DNA of 64,000 nucleotides. It comes from Haliotis cracherodii (taxonomy: Eukaryota). The DNA lies in contig NW_027266297.1 in the NCBI RefSeq assembly GCF_022045235.1, positions 53,196,001-53,260,000 on the forward strand. Reading direction: 5' to 3'. The stretch's first letter is position 1. Each line of letters begins with the position of its first letter. Position numbers and translations under genes: made by a program. The notes beneath the pieces were generated by a model. That model made no database searches. It was given only the letters and a program-made list of their open reading frames with translations, and was not told the DNA's origin. Positions 21,466 to 64,000 of this stretch are shown here, one piece after another.

Positions 21466-22004
21466 TACGAAGGGATAACGCCGTGGAACTTTGGACTTGT
21501 AACTATTGGCATTTGTATAAGATGTTATGTGCAACAAGTAGGAACAACAACTAGGAATCAAAAGACTGAGGAAGTTGATTGATTAAACAAAAACATGTTT
21601 GTAGAGATATAAATGAAGCGTTTTCATTTTGCTGCATTTTATTCATGTAAAAATAATGCATTATATCTAAACAGAATACATTTCGCCGCTGTTAAGTTAT
21701 TTCATGATCAACGTAAGTACTTATCTTTATTTCTGATTTGCCGTCTTATTTACAATTAAACGTCTCCGGTCCATGTTCGATGAAGGTATACATGTACGGT
21801 CTTGGTCACTTGCTTATTTGCAAAATATGTCCTTGAATATCCCCTTCCAATCAATTCAATTCAGTTCAATTTATTTACTGGAAAACCAAGAAAGGGCACA
21901 TTCCGCTTTCTGAGATTTGAACAATTTGTTCAATTTGTACATATTTGGCCATTCATAGATCATTTCTTAGGGAATGTCAATAGTTCGTTGCTGGAGAAGA
22001 GCTC

Positions 22005-40610: not shown

Positions 40611-42518
40611 ATGTTCACGACACGGAGTCTCCATACGCCCGTTAATCATATGGTAAGCATATCTTGACATCTGTTCATAGGAACGTAACATAAAATAAAA
40701 CGATTTGAGGGACACATCAAATTGTTGCGTTCCATTATTCCTTACAAAATCTACTGATGAAACGATTGATTTATCATATTCCTTAAGGCTTTCCAATGAA
40801 TCGCACATAATTTAGCATGTACATAGCGTGCTTACCCTTGATCTCATCGATATCTAATCCTGTAAAAGTAACATTGAGAATGAATGTGCCATATTTTTGT
40901 CTTCTAGACTTTGGCACTGTTCTCAGTCTTGGTAATAGCAGCACATGCAGGTAAATATATTATTCAACATTTTGTCCTACTGTTGTTACTTGATAAAGTA
41001 GTGAATAAAATCAATTATTATGGTATTATTATAAACTGAAAAAGTTAGGGATCATGAATAAAAAAAATTGTAGTGAAGAGTGAGCACTCAATTTTATAAA
41101 AAATATCACCCAAAATATTCATGATCCTTTTTTTTTATTAAGTATAGTTCAAGATAAATGTGTTCTATCTTACCATTACAGGCATTACCAGCGTACAGAG
41201 TTCCCGCTGTGTTAGATGGGATGGTGGTCAGTGTGTGGAGTGTTACTATGGGTGGTATGGTCGTCAGTGTGAGAGGACATGTACCAACTGCTGGACCACT
41301 GGGTGTTATAAGGATACGGGGATCTGTGAACAGTGTGTGCCGGGTAGATACGGAAGACACTGTAACACTAGATGTCCTGACAACTGTAGACCGGGTAGGG
41401 ACGGGACTGTGAACTGTGATCGTTATAGTGGGAGATGTCAGGAGGGGTGTAAGAAAGGTTGGTGGGGAGACACGTGTGATGACCAATGTAATAGTAACTG
41501 TGAGGGTGGAGCATGCCATCAAACATCAGGTCATTGTATCGGTGACTGCAGGGCGGGATGGCATGGCCAAAGCTGTCATAAAAGATGTTCTGTTGGTTGT
41601 GTAAATGATATATGCGCATGTATAACAGGGAAATGTCAGGACGGGTGCAAGCCTGGGTATTTTGGTGAAACGTGTGAAGAAGAATGTGATGCCAACTGTA
41701 TGGATGGTGAGTGTGATATGAACGGGAGGTGCGTCAAAGGTTGTGAAGACGGGTTTAGAGGCAACACTTGTCATGAAACATGCCCGATAAACTGCTTGAT
41801 ATGTGAACAAGACACGGGAAGCTGTACAAAATGTAAAATGAGATGGACTGGAATTTCCTGTACTGACAGAACAACATCAGAGAATGGCCAAAATCCCCTG
41901 ATTAAATTACAAAATTCTCAAGATTCACCCATAGGTATGTGCATGTACAAATCATTAATATAAATGTTACAACTTAACCTTATTTATTAGCAACAGCTAG
42001 TTATTAACAATTTATTGCAAACCATATCTTATTCAATAATCTTTTACCCAATCCTATAGAGCAATAATATGTATGTGTTAGGAAAAAGCACAGATAACGT
42101 GAAGGAATCCTGTCAAATAACGACATTTGCCATTTGCTGAAATGACAAGTGCATCTGTTATTTATGTATATATAGTACCTTATGTCCCCCTACCCTTGTT
42201 TCAGGTGTTGGATGCAAGACAAGCTGCGGTGACGCATTGCTACTCATGGTTTCTGTTATGGTTACTTTATCGACAAACATTGATGTTTCATATTACATTG
42301 GTATAGTAGCCAACATATTTATAGGTTATTTTCTTGGAATACAGAAGCTTTTACAATCGGAAATACGACGCATGTCTAAAGAGAGCACATCATGGTTATA
42401 CACTGGTTATACACATATTTGTAAATTGGCGGTTCCAAAGGCCGTCAATATCAAGTGTACATCCAGCACAGACCAGTTAAACATTGTCAACGAAACTAAT
42501 CAATGTTCTCATGTATAA
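40611..42518 (+). CDS. Gene 4: multiple-EGF-like cell-surface protein with an extended, two-hydrophobic-segment C-terminus
   Basis: Predicted exons: 40611-40652 (MFTTRSLHTPVNHM|gtaagc; start could be ATG 40650; homologous to the first coding exon of gene 7), 40908-40950 (TLALFSVLVIAAHA), 41182-41934 (EGF repeats|gtatgt), 42205-42518 (GVGCKTSCGDALLLMVSVMVTLST...YYIGIVANIFIGYFLGIQK...*). UTR exon donor at 39917. Confidence 0.78.
42425..42449 (+). promoter_or_regulatory. Conserved RNA stem-loop in the last exon (paralogous copies at 48627-48651, 54497-54522, 63963-63987)
   Basis: AUUGGCGGUU-CCAAA-GGCCGUCAAU forms a 10-bp stem with three G-U pairs. The gene 6 copy carries two compensatory pair changes. 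Confidence 0.6.
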
Positions 42519-45500
42519 ATTTTGCTGTAACAGTTGATATCATATCATGTAATGTCTGAGTGTGTCTGATTAGATAGGCAGCACTACAGCTGCAGTGTGC
42601 ATGACTGTCTATGTGTGCATATGATCAGTCACCATGTCACTGGCCGCATGTTTTGTTCTGAAATGTTTTTCTGTGTCAACTCTACGATACACATCTGTGA
42701 TATTTGTGATGAATGTTGTTTTATAGTTTTAAGGTAGTCGTAATGTAATGTCTACTTTGATCTCATTTACACAACCATGTATGATTTTGTGTGGGAGAAA
42801 TAACAAAATGCTCAAAGCCTTATCACCGCAATGTAAAATACAAGCACTGTTTAATATTGGGATAGCAAGTCACGTGTGTAGGATTTCATTACTCTGAAAA
42901 TAAAGATATTTTTTTAAAAACACCTTGCTGAAGTCACTATTAGCTCGTAATTTCACCACCTTGAAAGGCAAGATGATTTCTGTCATTTTGTTGAATGTTG
43001 TCCAATGTGTAATCCGCATCTCAGACTGGTGCTTTTATCTGTTTACTGGAGTGTGTAAAATTATACTCCAAGCCAGAATGTTTTCATATTCATGTTTTGC
43101 ATGTGGCAGTTTGGAATCTTAACTCAACATAAAGTTTGTTCAGAAAATGGTGATTTTATACCTCTTGAATCAATCCAATATCAAATGACCGCTTCAGTGC
43201 ATTTCTGGGGACACTTTGTTGTGTAAACATTGTGTAATATGAATGAATATATAAAATATTTACTGTGTTTATTTTTTCAAATATTGCTTCATACTTATAT
43301 GATGCTATACTCAGTGTATGAATACTCGAACTAATGTGCATGAAAGCTGTCACACCTAGTACCAACGATTTGAATGACACTTAGCCTATACCTACATTGT
43401 ATATCATGCAACTCTAGGATCCTGACATACCTCAGATCATCATGAATGGCGAACACCTCTGTTCAGTCATGTCCTTGTTGTGATTATTTTGACCCTGAAA
43501 ATTTGTCACTGACACCATAACACATTATACCTCTTCATTTTGCTACTCCTTGTCTGCTAATTTTGCTTTATGGCCAAAAATATCCGTATTGCGTTTCTGT
43601 TTTTGAAGAGTATATATGGATGGACCATTGAAATCAGTGATGACATCAGGTGTTCGCAAAAACGGTAAGCATGCCCTGCCCTACCGGTAGCAAGCGCCAG
43701 TAATAAAATTAAAAAAGTGTCTGTCTGTAAACAAACCTTACAATCAAGTGATCGATGAACCAAAACATCCAGAAACACGAGAGTACCATACTGATTTTGT
43801 TGAAACTAATAAAAACGATATGTGAATTATTAATTACGTCAGCTGTGCACAAGTGCAGATATTTTGCTGCTTATAAGTAAAGAAAAACGGTAAGAAATAT
43901 GTTCGTTTTGCAACACAGTGGGCGCAGTTTTAAAGTCTCATTAAAACACTCCTCACGGCAAAGATATGTAACTTCATAGTATTTGTGCCGTCTAAGACAT
44001 TTCAATTAGGCAACCAGCAATTCCACGTTAAGTAACCAATACCCTGAGGAGTTACCAATCCCTTTAAATGAGGTTGCAAGTACTTGCTAATGACCTGAAC
44101 AGGGAGAATTCGGGGCCCTGAAAGCCAACTGTCTGTCTTGTCCTGAATCTGTTCAATGAAAGTGTATCTGGACTTGGTATCACCTGTTTGGTCGGACAGG
44201 AAAGCTTTTGTCAGGCGATCTTCTTGTAGTCGGACATCTCTGAGTCGAACACCTCTCAGTGTGCAATTACATATGCAGCTGATTGCCGTCCCTCCCAGGC
44301 GGGATACATCGTGTTTTATTAAGATCACGCGAACCAATCAGATCTCATCATTCTGAGGTATGATAATTACGTATGCACGTAATACATAAAGTATATACAT
44401 AAATATACATAGATACGTGTATATGGACAAAGTAAATATATGTCGAACATGACATAAATTGATTGACGGTGATTGATAAACATAACATTTAATAATATGC
44501 ATAGGACAATTTGCATATGATTGAATAGTTTTGAATTCACCCTGTCTAATTACACTACCAGAGTAAGTATTCACACACAATACAGTGTACGTCAGTCTTG
44601 ATACATATTCCAACGTGCAAGATCATAACATAGTTCAACATGATTGACATAATCTATTCACAACAGTATTACAAAGAAAATATTAAAATGTACCTATAGG
44701 TATGACATGTTCAAATAACCAAACTAATTGCATATATTTAAGATTTAAAACAGTAACACATTGTAGACATTTGCTTACCTGAGAGAATAAATATATAGTC
44801 AACCACAGAGCGCAGATGATCGAGATTTCTGGTTAAAATTCGTAGGAAGTTTTTATTGTGAAGTTTAGTTAATTCATCTCAACAGAATTGTATAAATCAC
44901 ATTTAATCCGTAGTAGATCGTTGATATTGGGACGTTATCTGTTTCTCATCTCCCGCCCCTGTAAATTCCCCTGAAGCTGTTTCAATTTCTAAATACATAC
45001 CACATGGTATTTGCATGACGCTATTTGAAAATATAGCCATCAATTTTCACAATTGAATTTAATTTTGAAAATCACTATCGAATGTATAGAATGAAACTCT
45101 GAAACTCTTTTAAAGGAACATTGGAATAAAACTGAACTGTATTTGACAAAACTATATAGAACTTGATCATGAACCCACATTGAATTAATTTTTTTTTCAC
45201 CTGATAGTAGGTCGTTTTAAAATTAATTCTTGGTTTCCGACTCCAAAAATACCGTTCTGCGCACAGCCACCACTTGCAGCTTGGGTTGGCATACTGCAAC
45301 AGGAAGATCAAATTCAGTTAAGACCGGTGTTACGACGTAAATTGCGGACACTGTTTAAATACGCACGTGCCCTTCGTTGCTTTCTTGAATTCCGAAACAC
45401 GCCATGGCCATGGGAGTCACGAAGATAGAATTGGTCCAAAATACCATATTCTTGGATGAAGCGGTCAGACTCGGTGACTTGGGTTATTACGTATCATCGC

Positions 45501-45774
45501 ACCCCAACGACGATGGCCCTTTCTCCTAATGTCAACCTCTGGTTTGCCTGGCCCAGATTCGATTATTTGCAAAATGAATGAAAATAAATGAAATATTGTT
45601 GAACTATATTAACTCAGTCGCTCACTTTGTAAAAGCATAATTTATGACTTATTGTTTATAAATGAGTATTTTGAAGACTTTGCTCAAATAGATTGCCATA
45701 GGACTAGTGACATAACAGGAAAACCTTTCTACAGTCTAAATTGAAAGTTCTTGTATGCAATGGTAGCATGTATA

Positions 45775-45960
45775 TCAACGATGTTGTATAGGTGTGAAGT
45801 ACGGGGAAATATCTGGTGCCAGACCGCATTTTTTTAGAAACTTGGTGAAAATGAATGGGGTGACAACTGTAGGATGGTGTTTGTGATATGAATGGAAGGT
45901 GCGTCTAAGCTTTATAGACGGGCAACACTTGTTACAAAAAGCTCAATTAATAGCTTGTAT
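45775..45960 (+). pseudogene. Decayed relic of an EGF exon
   Basis: CAACTGTAGGATGGTGTTTGTGATATGAATGGAAGGTGCGTC..GACGGGCAACACTTGT aligns by eye to gene 4 at 41690-41800, with indels. Confidence 0.65.
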
Positions 45961-47063
45961 ATATTTGTATATATGTTTAATCACTAATACCTATGGATGA
46001 TGAGTCTTGAAGTTGTTATTATGGAACCAAGGGACCTTTGCCATTTTCTAGTGGTGGTCTTTTCAGTACAAAGAAATCCAGCCCATCTCATTGTAGTCCA
46101 GCTCCCGTGCCATATTCATACAGCAAACAGTTAATCGGCAGGTTTCATGACAAGTCTTGCCTCTAAAACCAGTCTACACAACCTTTAACTTTATAACCAT
46201 GGGAAGCAACTCTGCAAAGCTAATCGCCTTAAACGACTAAGACGCCCGTGCCCCCTACACATTAAAACCTTATACACATATAGTACGTCCGTGTGGGAAC
46301 AGCGAGTGCTTATTAAGCGCAAATCCTCATTCTTATAGATCAAACAGATACCGTTTTTGCCAGGAGAACATAAGGCTAAACATAGTGTATTGTCTCGGCT
46401 ACAAATGTACTATATTTGATAGTGCGGCAAGATCCTCACAAAACACCACGACCTGTTTAACGCCGGGTAACATGATGAACCTAATTGTTAGACTGTGACC
46501 CTGTTAAATACCTGCTTAAAAAGCTTTTATTAAGTCAGTTTTTACAAGCTCGGTGAGGTAGCGCTAAATTTCATGGAAAACAATATATAGTATGTTCAGA
46601 ATAGATAGAACATAATCTTCAGAGTTTCCCTAAGAAAGAATGTTAAATGGACATAAATAATGTCCCCGTGTTTGTCTTAACATTTGACAGTATTTTGTCG
46701 GAACAATATACACATGGACACATGCTGGGCCACACGCTATTGTGATACACTAGCAGCATTTATAAACACTATGCTTCAAAAATAGGTTGACAAATAAAGA
46801 TTGAGGTATTAAGAAACAAACCCTGTCTTGCTTGAAATCCAGAAATAAAGGTACTGGATAATAGAAATGAGAAGCCATATGGTAGTTAATTATGTTGTAC
46901 GCGTAATTTCATCTCTGGTCACTAAGCTGTTAACGTTTTTATGTTCGATTTGAGCCACACATGTCGAGTTAAATTATTGCGTTCCATCATTATCATTCCT
47001 TACATGAATGTTTTTGTTGTTGAAACTTTAGTTTTGTGGTTGATTTTGGTTTTACCATTGCAG

Positions 47064-48600
47064 GTGCTTCCAAGATACACAGTCCCCACTGTGCTGAGTG
47101 TGTAGAATGTCACTACGGGTGGTTTGGGCGTCAGTGGGAGCGAAAATGTGACAGCAACTGCTGGATCACTGGGTGTTATAAGGGTGTAGACGAGTTTAGG
47201 GGCAACCCTTGTCATGAAACATGCCCGATTAACTGCTTGATGTGTGAGCAAGACACAGGGAGTTGTACTGAATGTAAAATGAGTGGATTGGAATTGCATT
47301 TGCAGAGCAATATCAGAAAATGGCCAAAGTCCCCTGATTCCATCACAGAGTGTTCAAGATTCACCCATAGGTATGTGCATGTACATATCATCAAATATGT
47401 TGTAACCAAACCTGATTTATTTGCAACAGTTAGTAAATAATAATGTGTATTAACTACTTCAGTGTGAAAGACTGAAGTTGAGAAAAGTGATATTATCATT
47501 GCAGTGAACATAACACTTGATATTTCACCACGGTGAATATAACACTTCATATTTCACTGCAATGAACATAACATTTTGACGGGAATATTGTCATACAATA
47601 GTTACCTCCCCTCAAATTGTCTCCATTCATCAAGTGTCTGGCGCGTCCAAAATAGTTGACTTCCTTATTACGTTAGTACCACATTGACAAGGCAAAACAA
47701 TGACAGGCGGTCATTTATGGAGTTAATATCGTTCCTTGCCGTTTGTTATTCTCATGAAAATGATGCGTTATAAACTGCAAATTTCTAATTTAACTCGTGA
47801 ATCGCGACTGTCGGTTTCGCAAAGCTCCATTTTTGTTACATGACCACCCCGTATATTCTTTCGCTTCCAACAGCGGTCTCGGAGTTATCAAGAATATGTT
47901 TTGTTAAAATTGTTTTTGTATATATTCATAATTATCCAAATGTATGATAAAGAATGTCAATGACCTCAATTTTTTTATTACTTTTGGTTATATTTTGTAA
48001 GATTTTGCAAACTCGGAACTACTTTTTGAGTCGCAATTCCAAGGGTTGGTGAACAATGCGTTTTAGGTAGGGAGAATTTACGTTTCAACGTTTGTATTTG
48101 CATTGAAAAATAATTCCGGAAGACAACTAAACATAAAGTATATAATAAATAGGATATTCCATGTGTCTCGTGACACATTGTTACCTTCATCGACTGACGG
48201 TGAAAAGGTGATACATGTATTTTCACGAGTGGTGTGATTTACTTTCAATAGTTAGTAAATAACAACTTATAGCTAAAATATATTTTTTCGATAATGACTG
48301 TTAGGGCAGTTATATCTATTTGCGGGTAAAACAGTGACAACGTGAAGGAATGTTTTAATATTTATACGCAGCATTTACTGAAATGCATCTAATGTTTAGA
48401 TATATTGCTTTGTGTATTGGTACCTTATGTATCCCTTCCTTATTTCAGGTGTTGGGTGCAGATCTCTGTAATGATTACTCTATCCACAAACATTAGTTGT
48501 ATTGATGTCGTAACTAAGTTATTTATCGCATCTGTTCTTGTAATACAGAAGGCGGTCAGCATCGGAAATACAACATATCTCTAAAGATTGCTACCCATTG
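47064..48600 (+). pseudogene. Gene 5: chimeric, internally deleted EGF-family pseudogene
   Basis: EGF exon 47064-47370 keeps both splice sites but has lost most repeats, has a Cys-to-Trp change and a frameshift. Last exon from 48449 has a deletion and early stop (GVGCRSL*). First-exon relic at about 46840-46885. Confidence 0.8.
47441..48249. mobile_element. Unclassified insertion (probable MITE) in the gene 5 intron
   Basis: Absent from the paralogous intron of gene 4. Flanked by the direct repeat AGTTAGTAAATAA. Confidence 0.55.
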
Positions 48601-49112
48601 TTATACGCTGGTTCCTATATTTGTAAACTGGCGGTTCCAAGGGCCATCAATATCATGTGTAAATCCAGCACAGATCACTTACCTATTTTCAAGAAACGTA
48701 GCTAACTCAATGGTCTCTTGTTCAAATTTTGCTGTAAATATTGGAGGACAGTTGATATCCGTTCATCTAATGTTAGAGTCACTATTAGCTCGTTGCTCCA
48801 CCAGCTTGAAAAGCGAGATGATTTCTGCCATTTTGTTGAATGTTGTCCAATGTGGAATCCACACATCTCAGACTTGGCACACCAATACACCTTTGAGAGT
48901 GCCCACATTAATATCATTTGGTATTATTGGTTACTGGTTTAAATCTAACCCGGTGTTTGATGTGCAGTGAACATATGTGTTCAGTAATCGTTTAAGTGTC
49001 TTTACAATAACATTTTTATGTTTAGGATTTGGCAATTTGGAATACAACACAACAGAAAGTGTGTTCAGAGAATGGCGATTATATATCTCTTAAATCAATC
49101 CTTTATCAAATG

Positions 49113-49277
49113 GGGGCGGTTGGGTAGCCTAGTGGTTCAAGCGTTCGCTCGTCACGCCGAGGACCCGGGTTCGATTCCCGACATGGGTACAATGTTTTAA
49201 GCCCATTTCTGGTGTCCACCACCGTGATGTTGCTGGAATATTGCTAAAAGCGGCGTAATACCAAACTCACCCTCTCA
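49113..49277 (+). mobile_element. Full-length tRNA-derived SINE family B
   Basis: A/B boxes; perfect 13-bp TSD CCTTTATCAAATG (49100-49112, 49278-49290). Confidence 0.92.
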
Positions 49278-50897
49278 CCTTTATCAAATGACCTGGACAA
49301 GGAACACCTGCCTTTGTACGCTTCAGTGCATTTCAGGGGACAGCGATGTGTAAACATTTTGTAATATGAATGCATATCTATTCTATGTACTGTCTGAATG
49401 TTTTCAAATATTCCTCCCAAGTGGTTAGGATGTGATATGATCGAATATCCTGAATACTCGCACTAGTGTACATATTTTAAGTGTGCATAAAAGTTGATAC
49501 AGTCACGACGAGTGACAAAGATTTGAATGACACTTCGTAAAACCATATGATCCTGGCACAACTTAGATCTTCTTTATAGGCCAATTGGTCGGTACAGCCT
49601 TATCAACCGGATTAATTTATAGTGATAGGATAGGATAAATAATACATATTATAAACACTCCTTTCGGAAAAGAAAATTTGACATATAAATTAATAACAAT
49701 TGAGTCGTCTGTGACATTTTTATTGAGCACCCATGGGGGCTTTGATTCACGGAAAGACTTGGACATATAGTAATGCTTACCCGGGGAATTACCAAGCCCT
49801 TTTAAATGCGATTGCAGGTCCTTGATAAAGATCTGAACAAGGTGCATTCGGGGAACTGAAAGCCAGATCCTTCTCCAATGCAGGTTGACCTGCACTCGGT
49901 ACCACCCTTATATCAGGCGATATCATTGCACTGGCATTTGCAGTTTATTGTTGTGTCAGTGTCAGACAACGACGATACACCAGTTACCCTCTGTGTGAAG
50001 TGTTCCTCAAACTGCGGGGTTGCTTGGGCTGGATGTCAGTGGCGAGAAGTTCATGTATAAATCCTCTGTCAGTAACTGGTGCTGCCGCAGACTGTCTATC
50101 TGCTTGACAAATATCCTGGCGTGGCCTGTACCAGGAAATTTAGGTACCAAGTTCTCTACATATACAATACTAGCAGGCTGTGGTTGAGGTGGCACACTGT
50201 TGATCTCGACTGACAGATCACTATCTGTGTTGATACCAGATGTATAATGGTCGTTAGATCATCGAATGGTTCGACAAAGTCGCTGGTGTTGTTGCCTGAT
50301 CATGTTGTTACGTCGGGTGACTCGTCAGGGTCTTGCTGCTTGTGTTGTAATTAGTGGGTTGGTGTAGGCCGATTTTGGTTCTCCGCCACTTTTGAACCAG
50401 AGAGATGGGGAATCAACTCATTAAGTAGAGGTACCACTGTACACGATCAGTTTTTGTCCACTTTTTTATGTTAACAATAGTATAAGCAATAAAGATGTTG
50501 ACTGCATATCTGTTCTCCGTGTAATAAAAATTACATATACACAGCTGAAACACTCCCATTTACTCAAATAACATAATGACAACACAGCCATTTACCCAAT
50601 TACACAATAACATAAATAAAAACCCAGCATCAAAATTTAAATGGTTCTTAACATTATTAGCTCATACTTGCATCATACAACATGCCTTTATCTGACGGGC
50701 TAACGTCCTATTATCATTGATACTATTCTTAACAATGAAATGATATAATCACGTGTACATAAAGTGTACATCAATTCTGTCTTTCCTTCCCCAACAACAC
50801 AGCATGCGCCCACGCCGTTAAATAAGTGAAATACTGTTCAAAGCCGCGTTAAACCTATTCAAATTAGGGTCAGAATGCTATTTATCAAATGCCTGCA

Positions 50898-51113
50898 NNN
50901 NNNNNNNNNNNNNNNNNNNNNNNNNNNNNNNNNNNNNNNNNNNNNNNNNNNNNNNNNNNNNNNNNNNNNNNNNNNNNNNNNNNNNNNNNNNNNNNNNNNN
51001 NNNNNNNNNNNNNNNNNNNNNNNNNNNNNNNNNNNNNNNNNNNNNNNNNNNNNNNNNNNNNNNNNNNNNNNNNNNNNNNNNNNNNNNNNNNNNNNNNNNN
51101 NNNNNNNNNNNNN
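50898..51113. other. Assembly gap (216 N)
   Basis: Run of N. Confidence 1.
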
Positions 51114-52555: not shown

Positions 52556-54449
52556 ATGGCCCAAATTGGACGAATAACTTTAGTAAGTGGATATCTTGTT
52601 TTTATATATTTGCTTCAAATGACAGGTCTATAACGGTATATGAATATTAACAACTTACCTTTATAAACTGTACTTCGTTATGTTCATTTTAGCTATAATG
52701 GATGCTAAATATGGGATATTCAGGCCCATTTTAGTTATTTCGAAATATTTGCAATAAGCCTTACTTAACGAATGGTCAAATGTGACAATGATGAGTAAAT
52801 GAATTGTGCTTCATTTTCCCCTTTAGGGTGTTCTAGTGACAGTGGTTGGGATCGTCGTAGATACAGCAGGTGGGTATTCAGTCTGTGTTTCATAATTTCA
52901 TATTTAGCATGGGCAGTACTTGGATGGGTAATTAATTAACACGTGAAACACCGAACTATGTTAATCTGCCTGATAGCACGGTTCTACCCTGAGCACGTGA
53001 TCACTAGCTGGTTGGTCTCATGCTTGCTTCATCTTATAACGGGGCAATAGAGTAGCCTAGTGGTTAAAGCGTTAACTCGTCAAGGTTCGAGTACAATGTG
53101 AGCAGCTAATTTTTGGTGTCCCCCGCCGTGATGTTGCTGGAATTTACGGACGTTAGACTATTACTCACTCACTTACTGCATCTTCAATTTTTAGGTGCAG
53201 CTGATGTGGACATTGGAATGTGCATGAGAGAGTCCAATGGCAACTGTCTTGAGTGTCAGTATGGATGGTATGGGCCTCAGTGTTTGAATAAATGTCGATT
53301 TTGCTCGACCACTGGATGTGATCAAACAGGGATCTGTGAACAATGTCAGGCTGGTAGCTCTGGGAAATATTGTAACTCCAGTTGCCCTGATCACTGCAGA
53401 CCGGCTAGAGATGGAAGTGTGAACTGTGAACGGGATACTGAGAAGTGCCAGGAAGGATGTATGCGTGGCTGGTGGGGGGACACGTGTAACCAAACATGTA
53501 GCACACACTGTAGGCAGGGAGCATGTCTCCAGATCAATGGGGACTGTATAGGTGATTGTGAGGATGGTTGGTCTGGAGTCCAGTGTAATACAGCATGTCC
53601 ACAAGGATGTGTAAATAAAAGATGTTCTTTCCATGGCAAATGCTTCGATGGTTGCAGTGCTGGTCTGTGGGGAGAGGAATGTGATAAGACTTGTAGTAAG
53701 GCTACCTCAAAGTGCTTCCAGGGTAATGGCACCCGTACGGGTGAGTGTAAGGACGGATGGTACGGATTGCAATGCGATGCAGTCTGTTCTGTAGGTTGCC
53801 TGACGAGGAAATGTGATGCACGATCAGGGAGGTGCGAAGGTGGATGCAAAGTAGGTACCTATGGGGAAACATGTGACCGTGAATGTAGCTCACAGTGTCG
53901 GGGTTCACAGTGTGATACTAGTGGAAGGTGTTTGCAAGGTTGTGAAGCAGGATTTCAGGGCAGCTCTTGCACAGCAGCATGTCCCTTCAACTGCCTGACA
54001 TGTGAACAAGACGCAGATGTCTGCACAGGGTGCAAAATAGGATTGACTGGAACTCGTTGTCAATCAGCTCAGCCTGATATTTCAGGTTTGTATTCCTCTG
54101 ATTGCTAAGTACAACTGTAACATATCGTTCAGCCATGTGCATATATAATCAAGAAGAGTTATCTATAATGAGCTACGATGTGTGTTAAGCTTTAAGCTAT
54201 GTTCTAACAGTCGTTACATATATTTGCTTCAAATTGAAGATTCCTATTAACTTCAAGAAAAGGCAATGGTGATAATAAAACTAAGATACATGCATTACTG
54301 CATAGTTTGACACAAATGATAATAACATACCTATTCTCTCCATTTCAGGTAGCAGATGCTTCTATATTGATACTATTTTAATTGAAGCCTCAGTGATAAT
54401 CAGTTTGATCGGTGAGGCCGTACTGAATAGATGCACATCATCAGTTTGA
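52556..54449 (+). CDS. Gene 6: multiple-EGF-like cell-surface protein, short hydrophobic C-terminus (GPI-like)
   Basis: Predicted exons: 52556-52582 (MAQIGRITL|gtaagt), 52827-52869 (GVLVTVVGIVVDTA|gtgggt), 53195-54085 (EGF repeats|gtttgt), 54349-54449 (GSRCFYIDTILIEASVIISLIGEAVLNRCTSSV*). Confidence 0.8.
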
Positions 54450-57199
54450 CCAAACAGAAAGAGGTATTACATTCAAGGACTGTTTGGCAGTTGGCAGTTG
54501 GCAGTTTCACGAGGCTGTCAACATCCACAGTATCAAGGAGAAAACACAATCGCTGCATTGTGTCTATCTATTAAGCTTACCTACAAGGTCATGACTGTTG
54601 ATCTCGAAAGAGTGATCTGTACATAGTAACTGAACTGAAAATGTCGTCGTAATGTCATTAATGAGCATATCAAATTCATATCAGGTGTTTTGATGAAGTG
54701 GTTATTCATTTCAATGATAATGTGTACATTTACTCTTTGTTTTGTCTGTGTATTTATTGTTGTAAGTTGTAGCAGTAATAGTGTCAACAACGATCAGTTC
54801 TACATGCCGGAAGTTCCACCCGTCGTGAAAAAGAACTGTTCCATGGGAATAATGCCCCTAGAGAAATATAGTACAAAGGAACGGTTTCACTGAAGGAATA
54901 GACAATTCTTTGACAATAGCGCATATTAATTATGTGTATTGCACATAAGCCTAAGCCAAAATTCATATAATGCTTTTCACTGCATCGAAACATCGAAACG
55001 TCGCAGCTCGTTTAGTTAAACAGTTGACTGATCTACTGATTCATGGATAAGATATTTACTGGTTATTTGCTCCCTTAAAGGTTTTCTAATCGACGGGCAA
55101 ATATACAGGAATTGAAAGTCCTCAGTTTGGTTAGGTTTACAGCGGGAACACAGGCGATCTATATTCATTTGACTTGCAACTCGAGTACGAACAAAACAAT
55201 TTGCAAATTAAACAAAACTGAGTCAGCTGTAAGATATTTGTGTTAAAGTATTAGCTGTTACTATTAACGGTATATATGTATCATATGTACATACTAGACC
55301 ATTCCTGGAGGAATATATATGTTCCAGTGATGTAGTCAGTGATGTAAAAGTTCTGATCACCATAGCAAAGTGGGTTACATCGAACATCTCTTTTAAAGGG
55401 CACATATTGTCTTGTATTTTAGAATAATTGCCTTTATGTGTTCTTTTTTTATGAATAATTTGGTTGTTTATATGTGTATACATCGTAACTGTAGAAGAGA
55501 ACAATTCAACAGTTTCACCTTTATAACTTATTGAACATTCATAGAATAATCTCTACCCATCTATATGTGCTATGTTATGTGTTAAAGTCTTCTGTGTCTT
55601 TAAGATGCGAATCTACCGTTACCAATATGTATCATACTGGAAGATCTAGACGTTGTAAGATTATTGTGTGTATATTTTAGCTATTTTGTTCATATTTGAG
55701 TGAATGTATATACAAAATTAAAGGTTTGCTAAATGAGCGTATATATTGCCTGTTATTGTTTCATGAAACAGTTTTTTGGAGTGAGGGGCGATTGAGTAGC
55801 TTAGTGTTTAAAGTGTTCGCTCGTCGCGCCGAAGATCCGGGTTCAATTCCCTCCAAAGTCCATTTTGGGTGTTCCCTGCTGTGTAATTGCTGGAATACTG
55901 CAAAAAGCGGCGTAAATCAATATTCACTCACTCGTTTGGAGTGTAAACCATGATAAAACTTGGAACGTCACCCGTAACAGCATTCTCCAACCTAACCATT
56001 TTGGGGGACCACTGCTGGATCGTTTGTTTCACGCTTAAGACATTATTCCAGCATTATTCCAGCTATCCTTGGGCGCTCTGTAGAATGGAGTCTGGGCAAG
56101 GGAATGCAGGGTTTGGCTGCATGAGGAAGCACGATGACGCCTAACAAGTCACACAATGTAGCCACCCGATTGCCATCAGTCGACTCATACGACGCACATT
56201 GGAAGCAGGGGACGGGGCACATGTAGTACGTGTCTAATCCTGACGCAGACCTGTGCTAAAACGAGCCACACTGACGATATCATTAATGACTAGTATATTG
56301 TTTGCCAAAAGTTGATGCTGCTCTAAAAATACTCGGATTATCTTTATGAGAAATACAAATTCAATCCTTATGGACCTGTTATAAAATGTATATAAAGAAA
56401 CAAAGCGGGGCTACAATCCGTTTGCAGAAAAATGACGCAGATGAATCATAACTTGCCACGGAAAGTAGAAGTGATATTGGAAAAGTGACATCGCAAAAGT
56501 TAATAACTACACTACGCCAACTCACGTCTTCAAAATAATTGTTTGACAAAGAGAGTGAGTCAGTGAGTTTGGTTAACGCCGCTTTAAACAGTATGCTTGT
56601 TACATCACAGCACGTGACCTTAATGTGGAAGAAAATCCCGAAGTGATGCAAGTGTGAGTGTGTATGTGTGCGTGCGTGCGTGAGCGTGTGTGTGTGTGTA
56701 TGTGTGTCTAACGTGTGTCTATACTAGGAGGGATCTCATGTACAGTAACTGAGAGTACAGTGAGGTACAGAAATAGAAGGGCACAATTCAGTATTCTTAC
56801 TCTCAAATAGATTAGTCTTATGATGTTGAAGCACTGTCAGAATACTGCATTGTGCCTGGCAGTTCACATTGCACCTCCAAACTGCAGTCCACGGCTGACG
56901 TAAAAGAGATCTCATACAAAGTGTATGATTCTTTGAAGGCAGAATGTGATAGGTAGGCCATTTCATTCAATGATTTAAGGACGGGCAATGATAAGAACAA
57001 TGTTTCACCCCCTGGAAATGTCACATTTACGAACGAACATATTTCTTATACGTGTTTCTTTACTTAAATGCAGCAGAATTTCGCCAAAACAAGCAAAACA
57101 AGCAGCCATTATATTGTTTAGTTTCAACAAAATCAGTAAATGGTCTAACACAGGATGATGCTGTTACTTGTTTAGAGTCCGCCGTCAACGTCGGATGGC

Positions 57200-58200
57200 A
57201 GAAATACTGCTGAGGCAATAAACAAACATTTACTTTGTATGCAAGTTGTGTGTGCGGCTGGTGCTACCGGTAGAACAGGACATGCTTAACCATTTTGCGA
57301 ACACCTGGTGTCATCACTGATTTTTGGTGATCCAGTCATATTATCATCACTGCTTTTTCGCCTCTTCCTTCCAACGGAATCTGTTTCAGCGGATGATCGA
57401 GACTGATTACTATTCGGCGTTGACTTTTTGTTTTTACAGTTATTCAAACATGTGCTTTGGAAAGAAGAAATACACAAATGTGGCTACAGATACAGAGAGG
57501 TCAGTGGGGCAAAACGTAGAGCGCTTTGCGAGCAAGCAGACATTATCCAAATGAGAAAACATTACCTTCACACAATAAATTTAAATATGGATAAGGTTAG
57601 GAGCCTGTATATGGAGGAAACATCTCCCAGTGCTACCCATACAGCGAGCAATCAGTATGTACCAAAGGTGGGTTGTGGGAGTCCGGCAGAAAGCTACCTG
57701 TAGGAAAGGGTGCGAGGTTGATCATTTGGCATTCAAGGTGTAACGTGAGGGTTTCCTCCCTGGATGTTCTCCCGTTTTCAGGGCAAAGGCAACAGACAAT
57801 AATGACTTTTACACAGAAAAAAACTGCGCAATGTTCATAGAGATGCCGCAGAAACAGTTTGTCAAAGCCTTTTCCAAAAGGTCCATTGGACAGTTCATCA
57901 TACCACAGCATGCAGCACCCAGACACAAAGGTGCCAGTCTCAAATAACCGAAAAGGCGAAACAGTGTCATGGCTAGAAAACAACGATATTCCAGTGCTCA
58001 ACAAAACTAAAACTTGAATGTGTTGTATTGTCAAAGGTAATGCGGGTAGGTATAATACTTTATTTTGATAATTTTTTGTTAAACAATCACTTGGTCTGGT
58101 GAGTGTAGCCAACCAACTGTCAGAGATGTGTTGACGGGCCCGTGTTGAGGACGTATCATGTAACGTAGAGCTGGCATACAGGTCGATAGATGATCTCACC
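57200..58200 (+). mobile_element. Degenerate IS630/Tc1/mariner-superfamily transposase (possibly Sailor/DD82E-like)
   Basis: Remnants HKCGYRY, LYMEET (xDET-like), GKGARLII, GFLPG, SSSYHS (DNAxYH-like) and WLENNDIP..TK; many stops and frameshifts. Confidence 0.6.
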
Positions 58201-61117
58201 ATGTCAACGGCTTAGCATTTGGTCAGTTATGTAGAATCAGACAGTAGTGATTCAGAGTATGAATTAGTGACAAATGTTTTGAGATGACCCCTTTTCATCC
58301 AAACTGTGCTACCAGTTGATGCGCTCCCCTTTGTGTAAAGACGTTTGACACAACTATGTAAATACAGTGTCTTTAACAGCCATTTCCTACGGACATTTCC
58401 AACAATCAAATTTAAGATGTGAGTTGATGTGAGGTATTTATTAACTATTGTGATGTCACTATTCAAATGCCACTTCTACTTTCTGTCTAAAGTTATGAAT
58501 TCATCCGCGTTCCTTTGCTACAAACGGAGTGAACATGTTTGTCACGTCCTAGAGTAATAGTTTCTCTTACACAAATAATCCATCTCCGAGAACATTTTCA
58601 GGGAATTTACAACTGTGGCAGGTTGTTTGACTCAAATTTCTGAAAACCCTCTGTGGCGACTTTCGATTCAGGCTATGAAGGCTCTATGAAGGCCTAACTC
58701 TCGAGGAGAAGTAATGTATTACTTACTAGCCTTTTATCAAATCACGTCTATAATTAACATAATTGTCCAAAGCGATACGACACGACGTCATGAAGGAACA
58801 CGACGTATGGTTTGTTAATGACCAATAAAAAGTCATGGGTCCTTTGCCTTACATATCTTTGCAATAGATCATATGCCGCTGTACGAAGTGTACTGTCCTA
58901 TAGCTAGTTACTTCAAGAGACCTTACGTCAGACGCTGGTAAACCACAATATATACTTGTATACTGCAGCGGCTCGTGTTTTGAACAAGCAATAAATTTAA
59001 ATTGAAGACTGGTGGGGTGAGGTGAAATGGGGTTCAACGGCGCGTTCAAGATTGTACATTTAAATACTCTATTGACAATAACTGACGTTGCATGGCCTGC
59101 AGTGAGTAAGCATCATGCGCTAGGGTCGAGTCCGTCGAGACCGTCGTCTACACACATCGTTGCTACCGCATTACATTCAGTACACAAAACGTAACTTGAT
59201 AGCATAGAGATAAGGAGTACGACACATATATATGGATCGATTATCTGGTTTCCTTGTAAATTTCATGTTTTGCTTTGATGACCTAGGGTTAGGAATCATC
59301 ATGCTATTGAATTAGTTTCACCCTTATCTTGCAAAAAAACAACTGCAACAGCTTGAATATACATCACGCAGACATCTTCTCTACATGAGGAAGAAGATAC
59401 GCAAAGTGCATGTATATATTCTATTAGCATTGAGGTGAAGTAAGGTGAAATGTACCATACCACAGTTTAACATGAATACCCCACACAGTATACTGACTCC
59501 GATCCATCCAGTCCTTGTTTTCGCCCCTTAATGCCGAGCGCCAGTCAGAGTAACAACAAAAACATCTTTTGATGTCTTTTGTTATCACGGAAGCGGTTAT
59601 TATTATAATTGAGACTTTTGATATTTTGTTAACTGTTATCTATGGTTAATACGTTATACATTGAATTAAATAGTCAATTGGGATCTATTTCTGATCATGT
59701 CTTCGTACCTTTGTTCCGATTACAACGATACTGATCTAACGGACGACCAAGTTGACATGTGACACGCGTCGGATAGATATTCAGGCAACGATACATGATT
59801 CAATCATGCAGCTATATATCTGTCCTGTCAACCCGGACGTTGTAGTGTAGACAGCTGATTACAGGTGATCCTGTTTCTCGCGGAGCCTACCCCACTTGGT
59901 TGTGTCACGTGTCACATCGGAGTATATGCAGTTATTATGCCTTATCTTGCCACCACAGTCGTAAACATTAACATTGAGGGCATCCTGGAAAAACACAAAT
60001 CGTTCACGGGAATTCCGGAGAAAAAGTTCTAATGCATGGCATTATATGTTTTAAGGTCTTAAAATGCGTTGTTATATGTTTGATCAACGTGTACCTACAG
60101 TGGAACTTTTCTGCATTACAAACTGTAGACAATTTTTTCAGTAAATTATGTCCATTATATTGTCTCCTTTGAATTATGATGCTGGTTTTAGTCAGATGAC
60201 GTGTGGAAGATGTGGATGTGTAGATACCGGCATTTGTACAGCATGGACGTGTGACATTATCAGGTTATAAACCTTTCACAAGGCCATCCATCATATTCAG
60301 ATTATATCTTGTTACAGTTTCTTTACCTCACTTAAAGCAGATTTGAATACCTTACAGTGCATGCACATTCAAGACTACAACTGTACTCATCGTATTCAAA
60401 ACACAGTCCCTCTTATTGTACTGTGTACAGTACATCCACGCTGATGGGCAGGATACACAACTAGGACGTAGATAAACGGCAGTGACGTACATAGCTGATG
60501 TAATCATCTATATATACCCCATACCGCTGCCTGTGTATACAGTACTGTTTTAGTTGTCAGGAGTCCACCAAGGCTGTCGGTTGTTGTCTGCCCTCTTCAT
60601 GTGAAGTCAGGTGAGGCCACCCTCGCTGTTCTGCAACCCAAGCTCGCTGCCGTGTTCTCCTGTTCGCTGCTGGCTGCTGCATGACTTGGGTTAAGAAGAT
60701 TTAACTGCAAGTATATTCTTTCAGTTTTTGCACGAGCGTTGATGGCGACTTGTTTCTTATTAGAGACATTACATATATTGTTATTAGTCTGGCCAACTAT
60801 GCATCACTTATCATGACTTTAAAGATAACTTTTTCTCTCTGTAAGTCGGGCCAACTCAAAATCAGAGTGACATCCCTTTGCCATCCCAGGATCTGATGGT
60901 CGTGAATCAGATGCTTTGTCTGTCAGCATTATGAACTCGGGGGTTTCTTACCTGAGATGAGAGTACAGATGGCCAACTCGCCTTCTTGACGTTTCTGCAT
61001 CTGCTAGCTTTGGATTTGTAAACCGAAATTTGGTCATTACGTAAAAGTTTGCTCTCATATGTTGTTTTGGCTCGTTTGTCTAAACTGATAGACCTGTCAA
61101 CAACCTCTCCACCTTTA

Positions 61118-61260
61118 GTGTGTGAGTGAGTATAGTTTTACGCCGCTTTTAGCAATATTCCAGCAATATCACGGCGGTTGACACCGGAAAATTGGCTTGA
61201 CACATTGTACCTATGTGAGGAATCGAACCCGTGACGAGCCAACGCTTTTAACCGCTATGT
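61118..61260 (-). mobile_element. tRNA-derived SINE family B copy
   Basis: B box and tail; perfect 14-bp TSD CCTCTCCACCTTTA (61104-61117, 61261-61274). Confidence 0.88.
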
Positions 61261-61712
61261 CCTCTCCACCTTTAACGCCGCGTGTACGTACCCGGACTAA
61301 TGCAGACTTCAAAGTTCTAGTCAACTCAGGGAACAACAAGTACCATCTTTCAATGTCTGTTGGTATGACGCGACGGGATCGAATCACCAACTTTCCGCTT
61401 TCCGGGCACACGCTCGATCCACTTGACCACGGAGGCGGCACTTTCAGCTTTTGAGAAGAGGAAACGTGTTGTATTCCGGCGACAGAAAATATTATTAATT
61501 TTTTATATCTCTCCAATTTGTAATTAAAATCTCCACAATTAACATTATATATGGAGCGTTGCATATATACAATGATAACCCCTTGATATGTCTTAGTTTT
61601 AAGGCATTTATGACGTATCGCTACCCTTCCCTCGATATGATGATATTGTAATTACCCCGTGTTGTTTCAGAATCAAGGATCCTGAGGGTTAAATGAAAGA
61701 GACACCACCACC

Positions 61713-64000
61713 ATGACACAGCTTTACCATATGCCACTAAAACATCTAGTAAGTAATAACCACTGTTTTAATGTCATATATGCCAACGATGATTATAAGC
61801 CCCAATCCAGAGACCTGAGTGTTGTAGTGTATCTGTAATGCGTCTATGTTACAGTTACAGGTGAATCCTACACAGCTATATGAAATTGGTAAAAGAAATG
61901 CCTCAAGTCTTTGTTTCTTCCTAGTGTTTGATGCTGTCCCTGTACGCTGGACCAGCAGCAGTCGCAGGTAATTTTGTGTGATATACTTCTTAGAAAATGA
62001 CAAAATGAACTACTCTGGAAATGTTTTAGTTTTAGCCTTCATAGAGTGTTATAATACCACGTATATCTCAACAGTACTGATGGGCACGGGTGGCCATGTG
62101 GTCTGGGTTGTCGAACTTGTCTGGACATGGCAGCGTCCTAGTCACCATGTGAGGATCCGCTGATTGAGGTTTCGCATCTCTGGTTCTCATTGGTTAGCAT
62201 CACCATGAGTTTCACCAAAGTGGAACATATCTTTTAAGTTTTGAACGTCCTCCTTCAATTAAGCTAACAAAGTAAACTAACATACACAATTATTTGTGCT
62301 GTTTATTTTGCTATCATTTTAACTGGCGCCACATTGCAAAGTTTGAACAATATTATATATCGTTCTGATTTATCCCATTTCATGGATACGGCGGTTATTG
62401 AACTACACATGACCCAGTGTGCTCGACGGCAATATGACAACTGTGTGGATGGTTACAAGGTGGGGAGGGATGCTGGGGAGAGACGTGTAACAGAACTGTG
62501 AAGTCAGAACATGTTATCAAGGGACCGGTAATTGCATTGGTAACTGTAGGGCGAGATGGCACGGCCAGCGTCGTAGGAAATTTTTTTCAATTGATGTTCC
62601 TTAATAAAATTGGTGAAACTATGTAAATTAGCATGGTATTAATATAGTTCAAGATACCAAAAATAATTTGTGAATTGATCTTGATCTTACCATTACAGGT
62701 GCTTCCAAGATACACAATCCCCACTGTGCGAGGTGGCATAGTGGTCAATGTGTGGAATGTTACTACGGGTGGTTTGGACCTCAGTGTGAGAGAAAGTGTG
62801 ACAGGAACTGCTGGACCACTGGGTGTTATAAGGGTACAGGGATCTGTGAACAATGTGTGCCGGGTAGATACGGAAGACATTGTAAAACAAGATGTCCTGA
62901 CAACTGTAGATCGGGTAGAGACGGGACTGTGAACTGTGATCGGGTCGGCGGGAGATGCCAGGAGGGGTGTAAGGAAGATTGGTGGGGAGACACGTGTAGC
63001 AAGCGATGTAATAGTAACTGTAAGAGGGGGGCATGTATCCAGCAATCAGGACATTGTATCGGTGACTGCACACATGGCTGGCACGGATTGCACTGTGACA
63101 AACAGTGTTCAGTTGGGTGTCGTGGAAACCGCTGCAGTTGTGTGACAGGGGTATGTACGCATGGGTGTGGGAAAGGCTGGTCAGGTGAAACATGTGAAGA
63201 GCAAGAACAGCGAAGAGAATGTAGTGCCACGTGTAAAACGCATGAGTGTGATACGAATGGGAGGTGTTTGAAAGGATGTATACATGGATTCAGAGGCAGC
63301 TCCTGTAACGAAACATGTCCGGTGAATTGCCACATTTGTCAACAAGACACAACGTCATGCACGAGATGCGAACACGGATGGCAGGGACCTATCTGTACCA
63401 GCAGAACTATCACACATCATCATCATCGTCCGTCCAAAAAGGAACCGATATTCGACTCACTTGATTCCCCAGCTGTACCAAAAGGTATGTATATCACAAC
63501 CGATAGTGAAGCAGTCAGTCTAATCAAAATGAATGTTTCGGTCCAACTGCTTAACAAATGGATCCATCAAATCATTGTACTTTAATGGACCATCGGACAT
63601 TGAAGTAGTTTAGCTGAGGAATATATCCTGGTTAGTTGAATTCAATATATTGATGATGTATGTTCCTTTAACATAGAAATGAAAACCAAAGACGAAGAAT
63701 AATGCCTTTGCTTGTTAATGTTTTGGTATCATTCTCTTCCTTTCAGGTAGGGCGAACAGCAGGAATAATGGCAACGTGTTGCTGGTCCTGGTAGCTGTGA
63801 TTATCAGTGCAATGGGTCACATTGATCTGTCATGTTATGCCTATGAAACAGTCCGAATACAAGGAACCGTACGATACATCTTACAAAAGTTACGGCTACA
63901 CGTAAAACGGTTGTGTGTGCAGATTGCATGTCATGAGTGTACACTAGTTCATGCGTTTGTAAATTGGCGGTTCCAAAGGCCGTCAATATCAGATTGTATG
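61713..64000 (+). CDS. Gene 7: multiple-EGF-like cell-surface protein, closest to gene 4; last exon open to the window end
   Basis: Predicted exons: 61713-61748 (MTQLYHMPLKHL|gtaagt), 61925-61967 (CLMLSLYAGPAAVA|gtaatt), 62699-63484 (EGF repeats, HHHH linker|gtatgt), 63747 to beyond 64000 (GRANSRNNGNVLLVLVAVIISAMGHID... with no stop in the window). Confidence 0.8.
62385..62578 (+). pseudogene. Dead EGF pseudo-exon inside intron 2 of gene 7
   Basis: Remnants QCARRQYDNCVD, GCWGETCN and CYQGTGNCIGNCRARWHGQ with indels. The acceptor-like CCCATTTCAT lacks AG. Confidence 0.7.

What the first reader, a model, noticed from the sequence alone, without database searches (positions are those of the whole stretch)
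42425..63987. Covarying RNA hairpin conserved in the last exon of four paralogues
Seen: genes 4 and 7 share 36 identical nt (TTTGTAAATTGGCGGTTCCAAAGGCCGTCAATATCA) within otherwise diverged sequence. They read it in different frames (CKLAVPKAVNI vs VNWRFQRPSIS), so protein is not what is conserved. It folds as AUUGGCGGUU/GGCCGUCAAU (42425-42449, 63963-63987). Gene 6 (54497-54522, about 50 nt after its stop) has GUUGGCAGUUU-CACG-AGGCUGUCAAC: an A-U to G-C and a G-C to A-U compensatory change, with the G-U pairs retained. G-U pairs only work on the sense RNA. The pseudogene copy (48627-48651) has two pair-breaking changes. A weaker candidate follows gene 3 (about 21507-21527). Inference: an undescribed cis-regulatory element (decay, localisation or translation) coordinating the family. 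It does not match IRE, histone stem-loop or canonical Roquin CDE consensus.
Basis: partly seen in the sequence, partly recalled or inferred. Interest (0 to 1): 0.8.

Follow-up and report, generated by a model that had tools for sequence, protein, structure and literature searches.

The report
Conserved hairpin in abalone receptor mRNAs
A 25-base RNA hairpin lies in the best-conserved piece of the last exon of four neighbouring abalone EGF-repeat receptor genes, but the same bases also encode a conserved tail peptide, so an RNA role is likely and not yet proven.

Summary
The 36-mer is identical in genes 4 and 7 and has 3 changes in the pseudogene. Gene 6 carries a diverged hairpin with two compensatory pairs. 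A whole-genome pattern search and an RNA-model search of its 150 best candidates found only these copies, all on the sense strand.

H. rufescens and H. rubra orthologues and gene 7 all read the block as FVNWRFQRPSIS. Gene 4 here differs by one base about 55 nt upstream, so the "two frames" are a recent accident. A conserved peptide is therefore a real rival.

Nucleotide-level selection is still the better fit:
- 0 of 8 synonymous sites differ between genes 4 and 7, while the flanks show pS 0.5-0.9.
- Only 0.4-0.5% of synonymous recodings fold as well as the native codons.
- Gene 6's copy no longer codes for the peptide yet keeps every pair. Neutral simulation gives P 0.004-0.023.
- That copy lies in the 3'UTR of a spliced mRNA in three species.

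With three distinct stem sequences, covariation is not significant (29 of 500 shuffles). Function is untested. No Rfam, Roquin CDE or Smaug SRE match.

The parts
42418..42453 (+). 36-nt conserved block in gene 4's last exon. The hairpin is 42425-42449 (10 bp, loop CCAAA, three G.U pairs). It is read as CKLAVPKAVNI in this assembly's frame and as FVNWRFQRPSIS in the old frame.
63956..63991 (+). Identical 36-nt block in gene 7's last exon. The hairpin is 63963-63987. It is read as FVNWRFQRPSIS. The stop lies beyond the window (L002:1573-1575).
48620..48655 (+). Decayed copy in the truncated pseudogene (gene 5). It has 3 substitutions, 2 of which break stem pairs, and no significant fold.
54497..54522 (+). 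Gene 6 hairpin (11 bp, loop CACG). It starts 47 nt after the TGA at 54447-54449, has two compensatory pair changes and lies in the 3'UTR of a spliced mRNA.
42357..42366 (+). Interval holding the one-base length difference that puts gene 4 of this assembly out of the frame used by its H. rufescens orthologue. This is inferred from the protein comparison only.
42205..42518 (+). Coding part of gene 4's last exon (phase-1 acceptor). The stop in the present frame is 42516-42518. The old frame stops at 42478-42480.
54349..55400 (+). Gene 6's last exon. The splice 54085|54349 is seen in RNA contigs, which run on to at least 55394 (3'UTR about 1 kb or more).
63747..64000 (+). Gene 7's last exon (phase-1 acceptor), cut by the window end.

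Best explanation
Genes 4 to 7 are a small, abalone-specific subfamily within a tandem cluster of single-pass EGF-repeat receptors. NCBI names their relatives 'scavenger receptor class F-like'. The 36-nt block is the one strongly constrained piece of their otherwise freely drifting tail exon, and it appears to carry two overlapping constraints.

1. In the ancestral frame it encodes the tail peptide FVNWRFQRPSIS.
2. On the sense RNA it forms a 10-11 bp hairpin with three invariant G.U pairs.

Selection on the RNA fold best explains three things. No synonymous site differs between genes 4 and 7. The native codons fold far better than synonymous alternatives. Gene 6, which lost the peptide through indels and now has the element in its 3'UTR, kept every pair by two compensatory changes.

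The most likely action (inferred, not shown) is as a docking stem-loop for an RNA-binding protein that sets the stability or translation of these mRNAs. The different frame in gene 4 is a recent one-base change and says nothing about long-term constraint.
For: - Sense-strand fold: z -3.4 and -3.9, with 0 of 200 shuffles as good, while the antisense strands are not significant.
- The hairpin persists in the MFE and centroid of 145-nt contexts for genes 4, 7 and 6, but not for the pseudogene.
- Genes 4 versus 7 in the block: 0 of 8.0 synonymous and 0 of 28 non-synonymous sites differ. The 5' flank has pS 0.50 and pN 0.45, and the 3' flank has pS 0.92 and pN 0.81. The EGF exon has pS 0.35-0.71.
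- Only 108 of 20000 uniform and 75 of 20000 usage-weighted synonymous recodings of the peptide fold as well as the native 36-mer.
- Gene 6: all pairs are standard and 2 of 10 changed on both sides. Neutral simulation gives P 0.004-0.023 that all 10 pairs survive 10 substitutions in 35 nt.
- The gene 6 element is in mature mRNA. Three RNA-like runs have no depth in the intron, a GT..AG joint sits at 54085|54349, and contigs span 54403-54651, 54342-54947 and 54391-54947.
- In the pseudogene, 2 of its 3 substitutions break pairs.
- It is not a dispersed repeat. The whole-genome pattern search found only these copies, and the RNA model, which scored 150 of 209590 first-look candidates, added only one chance-level hit.
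Against: - Only three distinct stem sequences exist, and 29 of 500 column shuffles reach the observed covariation.
- At the sequence level the gene 6/gene 7 hairpin alignment is only marginal (21 of 300 shuffles).
- The peptide is conserved in 5 of 5 relatives that have this tail, across three species. The conservation extends beyond the stem (AFVNWRFQRPSISD in H. rubra), so a coding constraint certainly exists and could be the main one.
- Gene conversion does occur in this cluster.
- No cross-species nucleotide data for the hairpin could be read. The difference table showed 40 of 141 rows.
- The statistics are post hoc on a feature picked by eye.
- No binding protein or effect is known.
Confidence: 0.5

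Rival explanations
1. Peptide only. The block is conserved because FVNWRFQRPSIS is a functional motif of the cytoplasmic tail. The hairpin is a by-product of those codons, and gene 6's copy keeps its pairing by luck.
For: - All five proteins with this tail (own gene 7, H. rufescens gene-4 orthologue, two H. rufescens gene-7 isoforms, H. rubra relative) read the same 12 residues.
- H. rubra keeps 14 of 14 residues (AFVNWRFQRPSISD), while I counted 17 of 24 identical by eye in the stretch before it.
- The motif is absent from the other 150 of 155 family proteins held.
- Conservation covers the loop and flanks as well as the stem.
Against: - 0 of 8 synonymous sites differ although flank pS is 0.5 or more. 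By my arithmetic that is about 0.5^8 = 0.004.
- The native codons are in the best 0.4-0.5% for folding.
- Gene 6 retains the pairing without the peptide.
Confidence: 0.25
2. Recent short gene-conversion tract between genes 4 and 7, with no function of its own.
For: - The cluster shows exchange. Genes 4 and 7 are 80-95% identical at 41214-41530 against 50-60% elsewhere, with pS 0.35 against 0.71.
- The pseudogene is a mosaic of gene-7-like and gene-4-like pieces.
Against: - The tract would be only 36 nt long, set in flanks about 50-60% identical.
- It would have to coincide with the peptide conserved in H. rubra, with the best-folding segment and with gene 6's conserved hairpin.
Confidence: 0.1
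3. A DNA-level or purely mutational cause: an exonic protein-binding palindrome, or template switching during replication that restores complementarity without selection on RNA.
For: - The element is an imperfect inverted repeat.
- Gene 6 has a 7-nt tandem duplication beside the stem, a sign of replication slippage.
- Template switching is reported to create and maintain hairpins (PMC8794818; I saw only the search listing and the start of the abstract).
Against: - Three G.U positions are kept in both versions, and they would be mismatches in DNA.
- The two compensated pairs are separated by a retained G.U, so one switch event would not do it (my reading).
- The antisense fold is not significant.
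Confidence: 0.05

Closest known systems
Roquin constitutive decay element (CDE) and alternative decay element (ADE)
   Same: A single short hairpin in mRNAs of immune-type receptors, recognised by shape, and kept through compensatory changes.
   Different: The relaxed CDE consensus is a 6-8 bp stem with a YRN triloop. A 9-bp stem was inactive and G.U pairs reduced activity. The ADE has a U-rich hexaloop (passages of PMC6294493). Here the stem is 10-11 bp, the loops are CCAAA and CACG, and there are three G.U pairs.
Smaug/Vts1/SAMD4 recognition element (SRE)
   Same: A stem-loop on a non-specific stem, in the coding region or UTR, that controls translation and decay.
   Different: The SRE loop must begin CNGG (passages of PMC4053848). 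The loops here do not.
Rfam cis-regulatory hairpins (histone 3' stem-loop, IRE, SECIS and others)
   Same: Small mRNA hairpins near the 3' end of the message.
   Different: No Rfam family matched any copy at E<=10. The 5 matches in 40000-64000 all lie elsewhere.
Scavenger receptor class F / MEGF-type EGF-repeat receptors (the host genes)
   Same: Signal peptide, one large exon of cysteine-rich EGF-like repeats, one hydrophobic segment and a short tail. NCBI names the H. rufescens and H. rubra relatives 'scavenger receptor class F member 1/2-like'.
   Different: Pfam gives only EGF_TEN below its cut-off (31.7 and 22.1 bits against 65). The tail motif was seen only in this Haliotis subfamily.

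Membership tests
Roquin CDE | 6-8 bp stem capped by a YRN triloop | tested here: not met
   The stem is 10-11 bp and the loops are 5 nt (CCAAA) and 4 nt (CACG). Definition taken from passages of PMC6294493.
Roquin CDE | Stem without G.U wobble pairs (these reduced activity and were excluded from the consensus search) | tested here: not met
   Three invariant G.U pairs. Definition.
Roquin ADE | Hairpin capped by a U-rich hexaloop | tested here: not met
   The loops are CCAAA and CACG.
Smaug recognition element | Loop sequence CNGG followed by 0-4 further bases, at the 5' end of the loop | tested here: not met
   Neither loop starts CNGG. Definition from passages of PMC4053848.
Any Rfam 15 family | Covariance-model match at or near the gathering score | tested here: not met
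   cmscan of 40000-64000 at E<=10 gave 5 matches, none on a hairpin copy.
Structured cis-regulatory mRNA element (generic) | Lies in the mature mRNA, on the sense strand | tested here: met
   Gene 6: spliced RNA contigs cover it in three runs. Genes 4 and 7: it lies inside the annotated coding sequence of relatives. The fold is specific to the sense strand.
Structured cis-regulatory mRNA element (generic) | Statistically significant covariation | tested here: inconclusive
   2 of 10 pairs are compensatory, but 29 of 500 shuffles reach this with only 3 distinct stems.
Structured cis-regulatory mRNA element (generic) | A measurable effect on mRNA fate, or a bound factor | not testable with these tools
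   This needs reporters, structure probing and pull-down.
Dispersed transposon or repeat | Many copies outside the gene family | tested here: not met
   Genome-wide there are 3 copies at 3 mismatches or fewer and 3 for the degenerate pattern. The model found the 4 copies plus one chance-level minisatellite hit at 24.3 bits, E 1.8, with 150 of 209590 candidates scored.

The most novel reading that the evidence does not exclude
A lineage-specific mRNA hairpin whose fold has outlived the reading frame. The same structure is kept where it is in frame (gene 7), frameshifted (gene 4 of this assembly) and untranslated (gene 6). It would serve as a shared post-transcriptional switch for a fast-evolving, highly polymorphic abalone receptor cluster, bound by a stem-loop-specific protein that reads the invariant G.U pairs.
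Probability: 0.35. Interest if true: 0.6.

Novelty: new member of a known kind. Interest (0 to 1): 0.45.

Why it matters
If real, this is a compact and testable case of codons under double duty, peptide plus RNA fold, in a mollusc. Almost no cis-regulatory mRNA structures have been described in molluscs. It sits in a tandem family of immune-type receptors, and it would give a handle on how paralogues are co-regulated after transcription. If the peptide is the only constraint, the block instead marks a new tail motif of these receptors. Either way the finding is narrow: four copies, one genus, no known function.

Tried and rejected
- Dispersed repeat or transposon: rejected.
- Gene-3 candidate hairpin: rejected.
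- Extended outer helices around the hairpin in genes 4 and 7: the pairs are not in the same alignment register by my reading, so I did not count them.
- The C67 hit of the model is a 59-bp minisatellite of 17 units. I took it as chance.
- Programmed frameshifting or readthrough stimulated by the hairpin: considered and dropped. The spacing is about 45-55 nt and I saw no slippery site (my reading, not tested).
- Protein searches for gene 6 orthologues found none. One search scored 0 of 44 candidates at E<=1e-10. In one search the closest were P0001 and P0003 at 51%.
- The tail-region search found only P0002 and P0003.
Variation inside the gene-6 hairpin in the other species could not be read.
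- Paper searches gave nothing on this gene family's tail or hairpin. I know of no description in print, on the strength of those two searches only. Supplements were not consulted.
Full report
**Setting.** The window is G000:C34:53196001-53260000 of a 1.18-Gb genome in 80 contigs. It is an abalone. The large exon of gene 4 is 93% identical to a Haliotis rufescens protein that NCBI names 'scavenger receptor class F member 1-like' (P0001). I did not determine the species.

A tblastx of gene 4 against the window shows seven same-strand paralogues. Their EGF-repeat exons lie at about 4921-5650, 12300-13025, 20357-21130, 41182-41934, 47024-47400 (a truncated pseudogene), 53192-54085 and 62674-63487. 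Genes 4, 6 and 7 have the same layout: a single phase-1 EGF exon, then a last exon with a hydrophobic segment and a short tail. Pfam gives only sub-threshold EGF_TEN hits. Spliced models were searched exon by exon and the joined step was left out.

**The assembly gap.** The gap at 50898-51113 lies between the pseudogene and gene 6, in sequence with no family similarity. It touches no copy of the element. Whether it hides gene 6's first exon cannot be told.

**The observation.**
- The 36-mer is exact at 42418-42453 and 63956-63991 and has three mismatches at 48620-48655. None of 100 shuffles gave a match.
- Gene 4 reads it as CKLAVPKAVNI in the frame fixed by its splice phase. Gene 7 reads it as VNWRFQRPSIS.
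- The sense RNA folds into a 10-bp hairpin: -12 kcal/mol, z -3.4, 0 of 200 shuffles as good.
- Gene 6 has an 11-bp version at 54497-54522: -16.1 kcal/mol, z -3.9, 0 of 200.
- The pseudogene copy does not fold (z +0.1) and neither do the antisense strands (z -0.7, -0.6).
- In 145-nt contexts the hairpin stays in the MFE and centroid for genes 4, 7 and 6 but not for the pseudogene.
- On the four-copy alignment, 38 of 40 cells pair. Six pairs never vary, including all three G.U pairs. Two pairs changed on both sides in gene 6, and two are broken only in the pseudogene.
- The gene-3 candidate is not supported.

**Copy number.** Genome-wide, the 25-mer with up to 3 mismatches occurs three times. 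A degenerate hairpin pattern also occurs three times, in genes 4, 6 and 7. All copies are on the + strand, and the reversed control pattern gave none. A covariance model built from the four copies finds only those four in the window with filters off, at 44-55 bits, and the next best match scores 11.4 bits. In the whole genome it finds the four copies plus one 24.3-bit hit (E 1.8) in a 59-bp minisatellite. Only 150 of 209590 first-look candidates were scored there. The element is therefore not a dispersed repeat. No Rfam family matches it.

The proteins returned by the searches show that the block is coding and is read in one frame almost everywhere:
- H. rufescens gene-4 orthologue: ...HIFVNWRFQRPSISSVHPAQTR.
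- Own gene 7 (P0002): ...HAFVNWRFQRPSISDCMSSGTVILSP.
- Two H. rufescens gene-7 isoforms: the same motif.
- An H. rubra relative...QAFVNWRFQRPSISDR.

Gene 4 of this assembly matches P0001 in one frame up to QKLLQS. From YDACLKRA onwards it matches in the neighbouring frame. This implies a one-base length difference within about 42357-42366. The old frame is still open to the old stop at 42478-42480. So 'two frames' is a recent change, a polymorphism or an assembly error. I could not tell which, and it carries no weight about long-term constraint.

**What still favours an RNA constraint.**
1. Between genes 4 and 7 the block has 0 of 8.0 synonymous and 0 of 28 non-synonymous differences. The 18 codons before it have pS 0.50 and pN 0.45, and the 8 codons after it have pS 0.92 and pN 0.81. 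The EGF exon has pS 0.35 in its 5' part and 0.71 in its 3' part. The tail around the block drifts almost neutrally. By my arithmetic, peptide selection alone would leave all 8 synonymous sites unchanged with a chance of roughly 0.5^8 = 0.004 or less.
2. Of 20000 random synonymous recodings of FVNWRFQRPSIS, 108 (uniform) or 75 (weighted by this family's codon usage) fold as stably as the native 36-mer.
3. Gene 6's copy no longer encodes the peptide. It has a 7-nt tandem duplication at the 5' arm and an extra base in the loop, and it lies after a TGA. Even so, all its stem pairs are standard. Simulated neutral change (10 substitutions in 35 nt) keeps all ten pairs in 0.4-2.3% of trials.
4. Two of the pseudogene's three substitutions break pairs.

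**Is it in mature mRNA?** I laid four runs on 52900-55400. The three small runs (own species A, and species B and E) have no depth in the intron bins 54160-54327, while the DNA run of species D covers them. The own-species run has a GT..AG joint equivalent to 54085|54349. I therefore take the three small runs to be RNA. Their contigs cover the hairpin: 54403-54651 with one difference, 54342-54947, and 54391-54947. They continue to at least 55394. Gene 6 is therefore spliced as predicted, and its hairpin sits in a 3'UTR of about 1 kb or more in three species.

The table of differences showed only 40 of 141 rows. None of the shown rows lies in 54384-54656, but that does not prove the sequences are identical there. 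The cross-species test of the stem therefore remains undone.

**Against the RNA reading.**
- Only three distinct stems exist, and 29 of 500 column shuffles match the covariation.
- The gene 6/gene 7 hairpin alignment is marginal as plain sequence (21 of 300 shuffles), and other 3'UTR blocks also align between genes 6 and 4.
- The peptide conservation extends beyond the stem.
- Gene conversion is active in the cluster. There is an 80-95% identity tract at 41214-41530 between genes 4 and 7, and the pseudogene is a mosaic.
- A 36-nt conversion tract in 50-60% identical flanks would have to coincide with the H. rubra-conserved peptide, with the best-folding segment and with gene 6's hairpin. That seems unlikely to me, but it is not excluded.
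- All statistics are post hoc.

**Comparison with known elements.**
- The element does not fit the relaxed Roquin CDE (6-8 bp stem, YRN triloop, no G.U) or the ADE (U-rich hexaloop). Definitions are from passages of PMC6294493.
- It does not fit the Smaug SRE (loop starting CNGG). Definition from passages of PMC4053848.
- It does not fit any Rfam family.
- Template switching as a non-selective source of compensatory changes (PMC8794818, of which I saw only the listing and the start of the abstract) does not fit well. A retained G.U pair lies between the two compensated pairs.

**Verdict.** The conclusion, a sense-strand RNA hairpin under selection, remains the best single explanation at about even odds, overlapping a genuinely conserved tail peptide.

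Noticed in passing
window 53814-53997 and 55158-55285: The own-species RNA-like run holds two forms of gene 6. One is identical to the window. The other has 10 differences in 184 nt, and 7 in 128 nt. Six of the former (53877, 53891, 53907, 53932, 53946, 53967) are also the letters of the three other species. This could be a deeply divergent allele, shared polymorphism or a close paralogue.
   Followed up: no
window 54447-54623: After gene 6's TGA the same frame stays open for 58 more codons, running through the hairpin. It shares an in-frame IQG with gene 7's tail. The stop may be recent.
   Followed up: partly
window 41214-41530 versus 62734-63050 (about): Genes 4 and 7 are 80-95% identical in the 5' half of the EGF exon against 50-60% in the rest, with pS 0.35 against 0.71. 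This looks like a gene-conversion tract.
   Followed up: partly
window 47040-47394: The pseudogene is a mosaic. 47040-47185 is 87-91% like gene 7 and 62-65% like gene 4. 47184-47394 is 86-88% like gene 4.
   Followed up: no
window 41181-42518: No product of gene 4 of this genome came back from the protein collection, whereas gene 7's did. The best hit was the H. rufescens orthologue at 93%. The annotators may have treated the frameshifted gene 4 as a pseudogene.
   Followed up: no
L022 775-1779 (G000:C67): A 59-bp minisatellite of 17 units whose unit weakly resembles the 36-mer (24.3 bits, E 1.8). I took it as chance.
   Followed up: yes
window 6100-6560: Downstream of gene 1 the + strand reads like a reverse-transcriptase fragment (a Y-A-D-D stretch) of a retroelement. 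This is my reading, not tested.
   Followed up: no
window 49124-49182, 55790-55861, 52984-53151: tRNA-like heads of a SINE family. Rfam tRNA matches are below the gathering score at the first two places. The third place has very high contig depth and GGTTCGATTCC-type loose ends. Related repeats are families D4, D9, D11 and D12.
   Followed up: no
window 31998-33290: Near-perfect (98-100%) direct repeats with 535-748 nt spacing (families D3, D6, D10).
   Followed up: no
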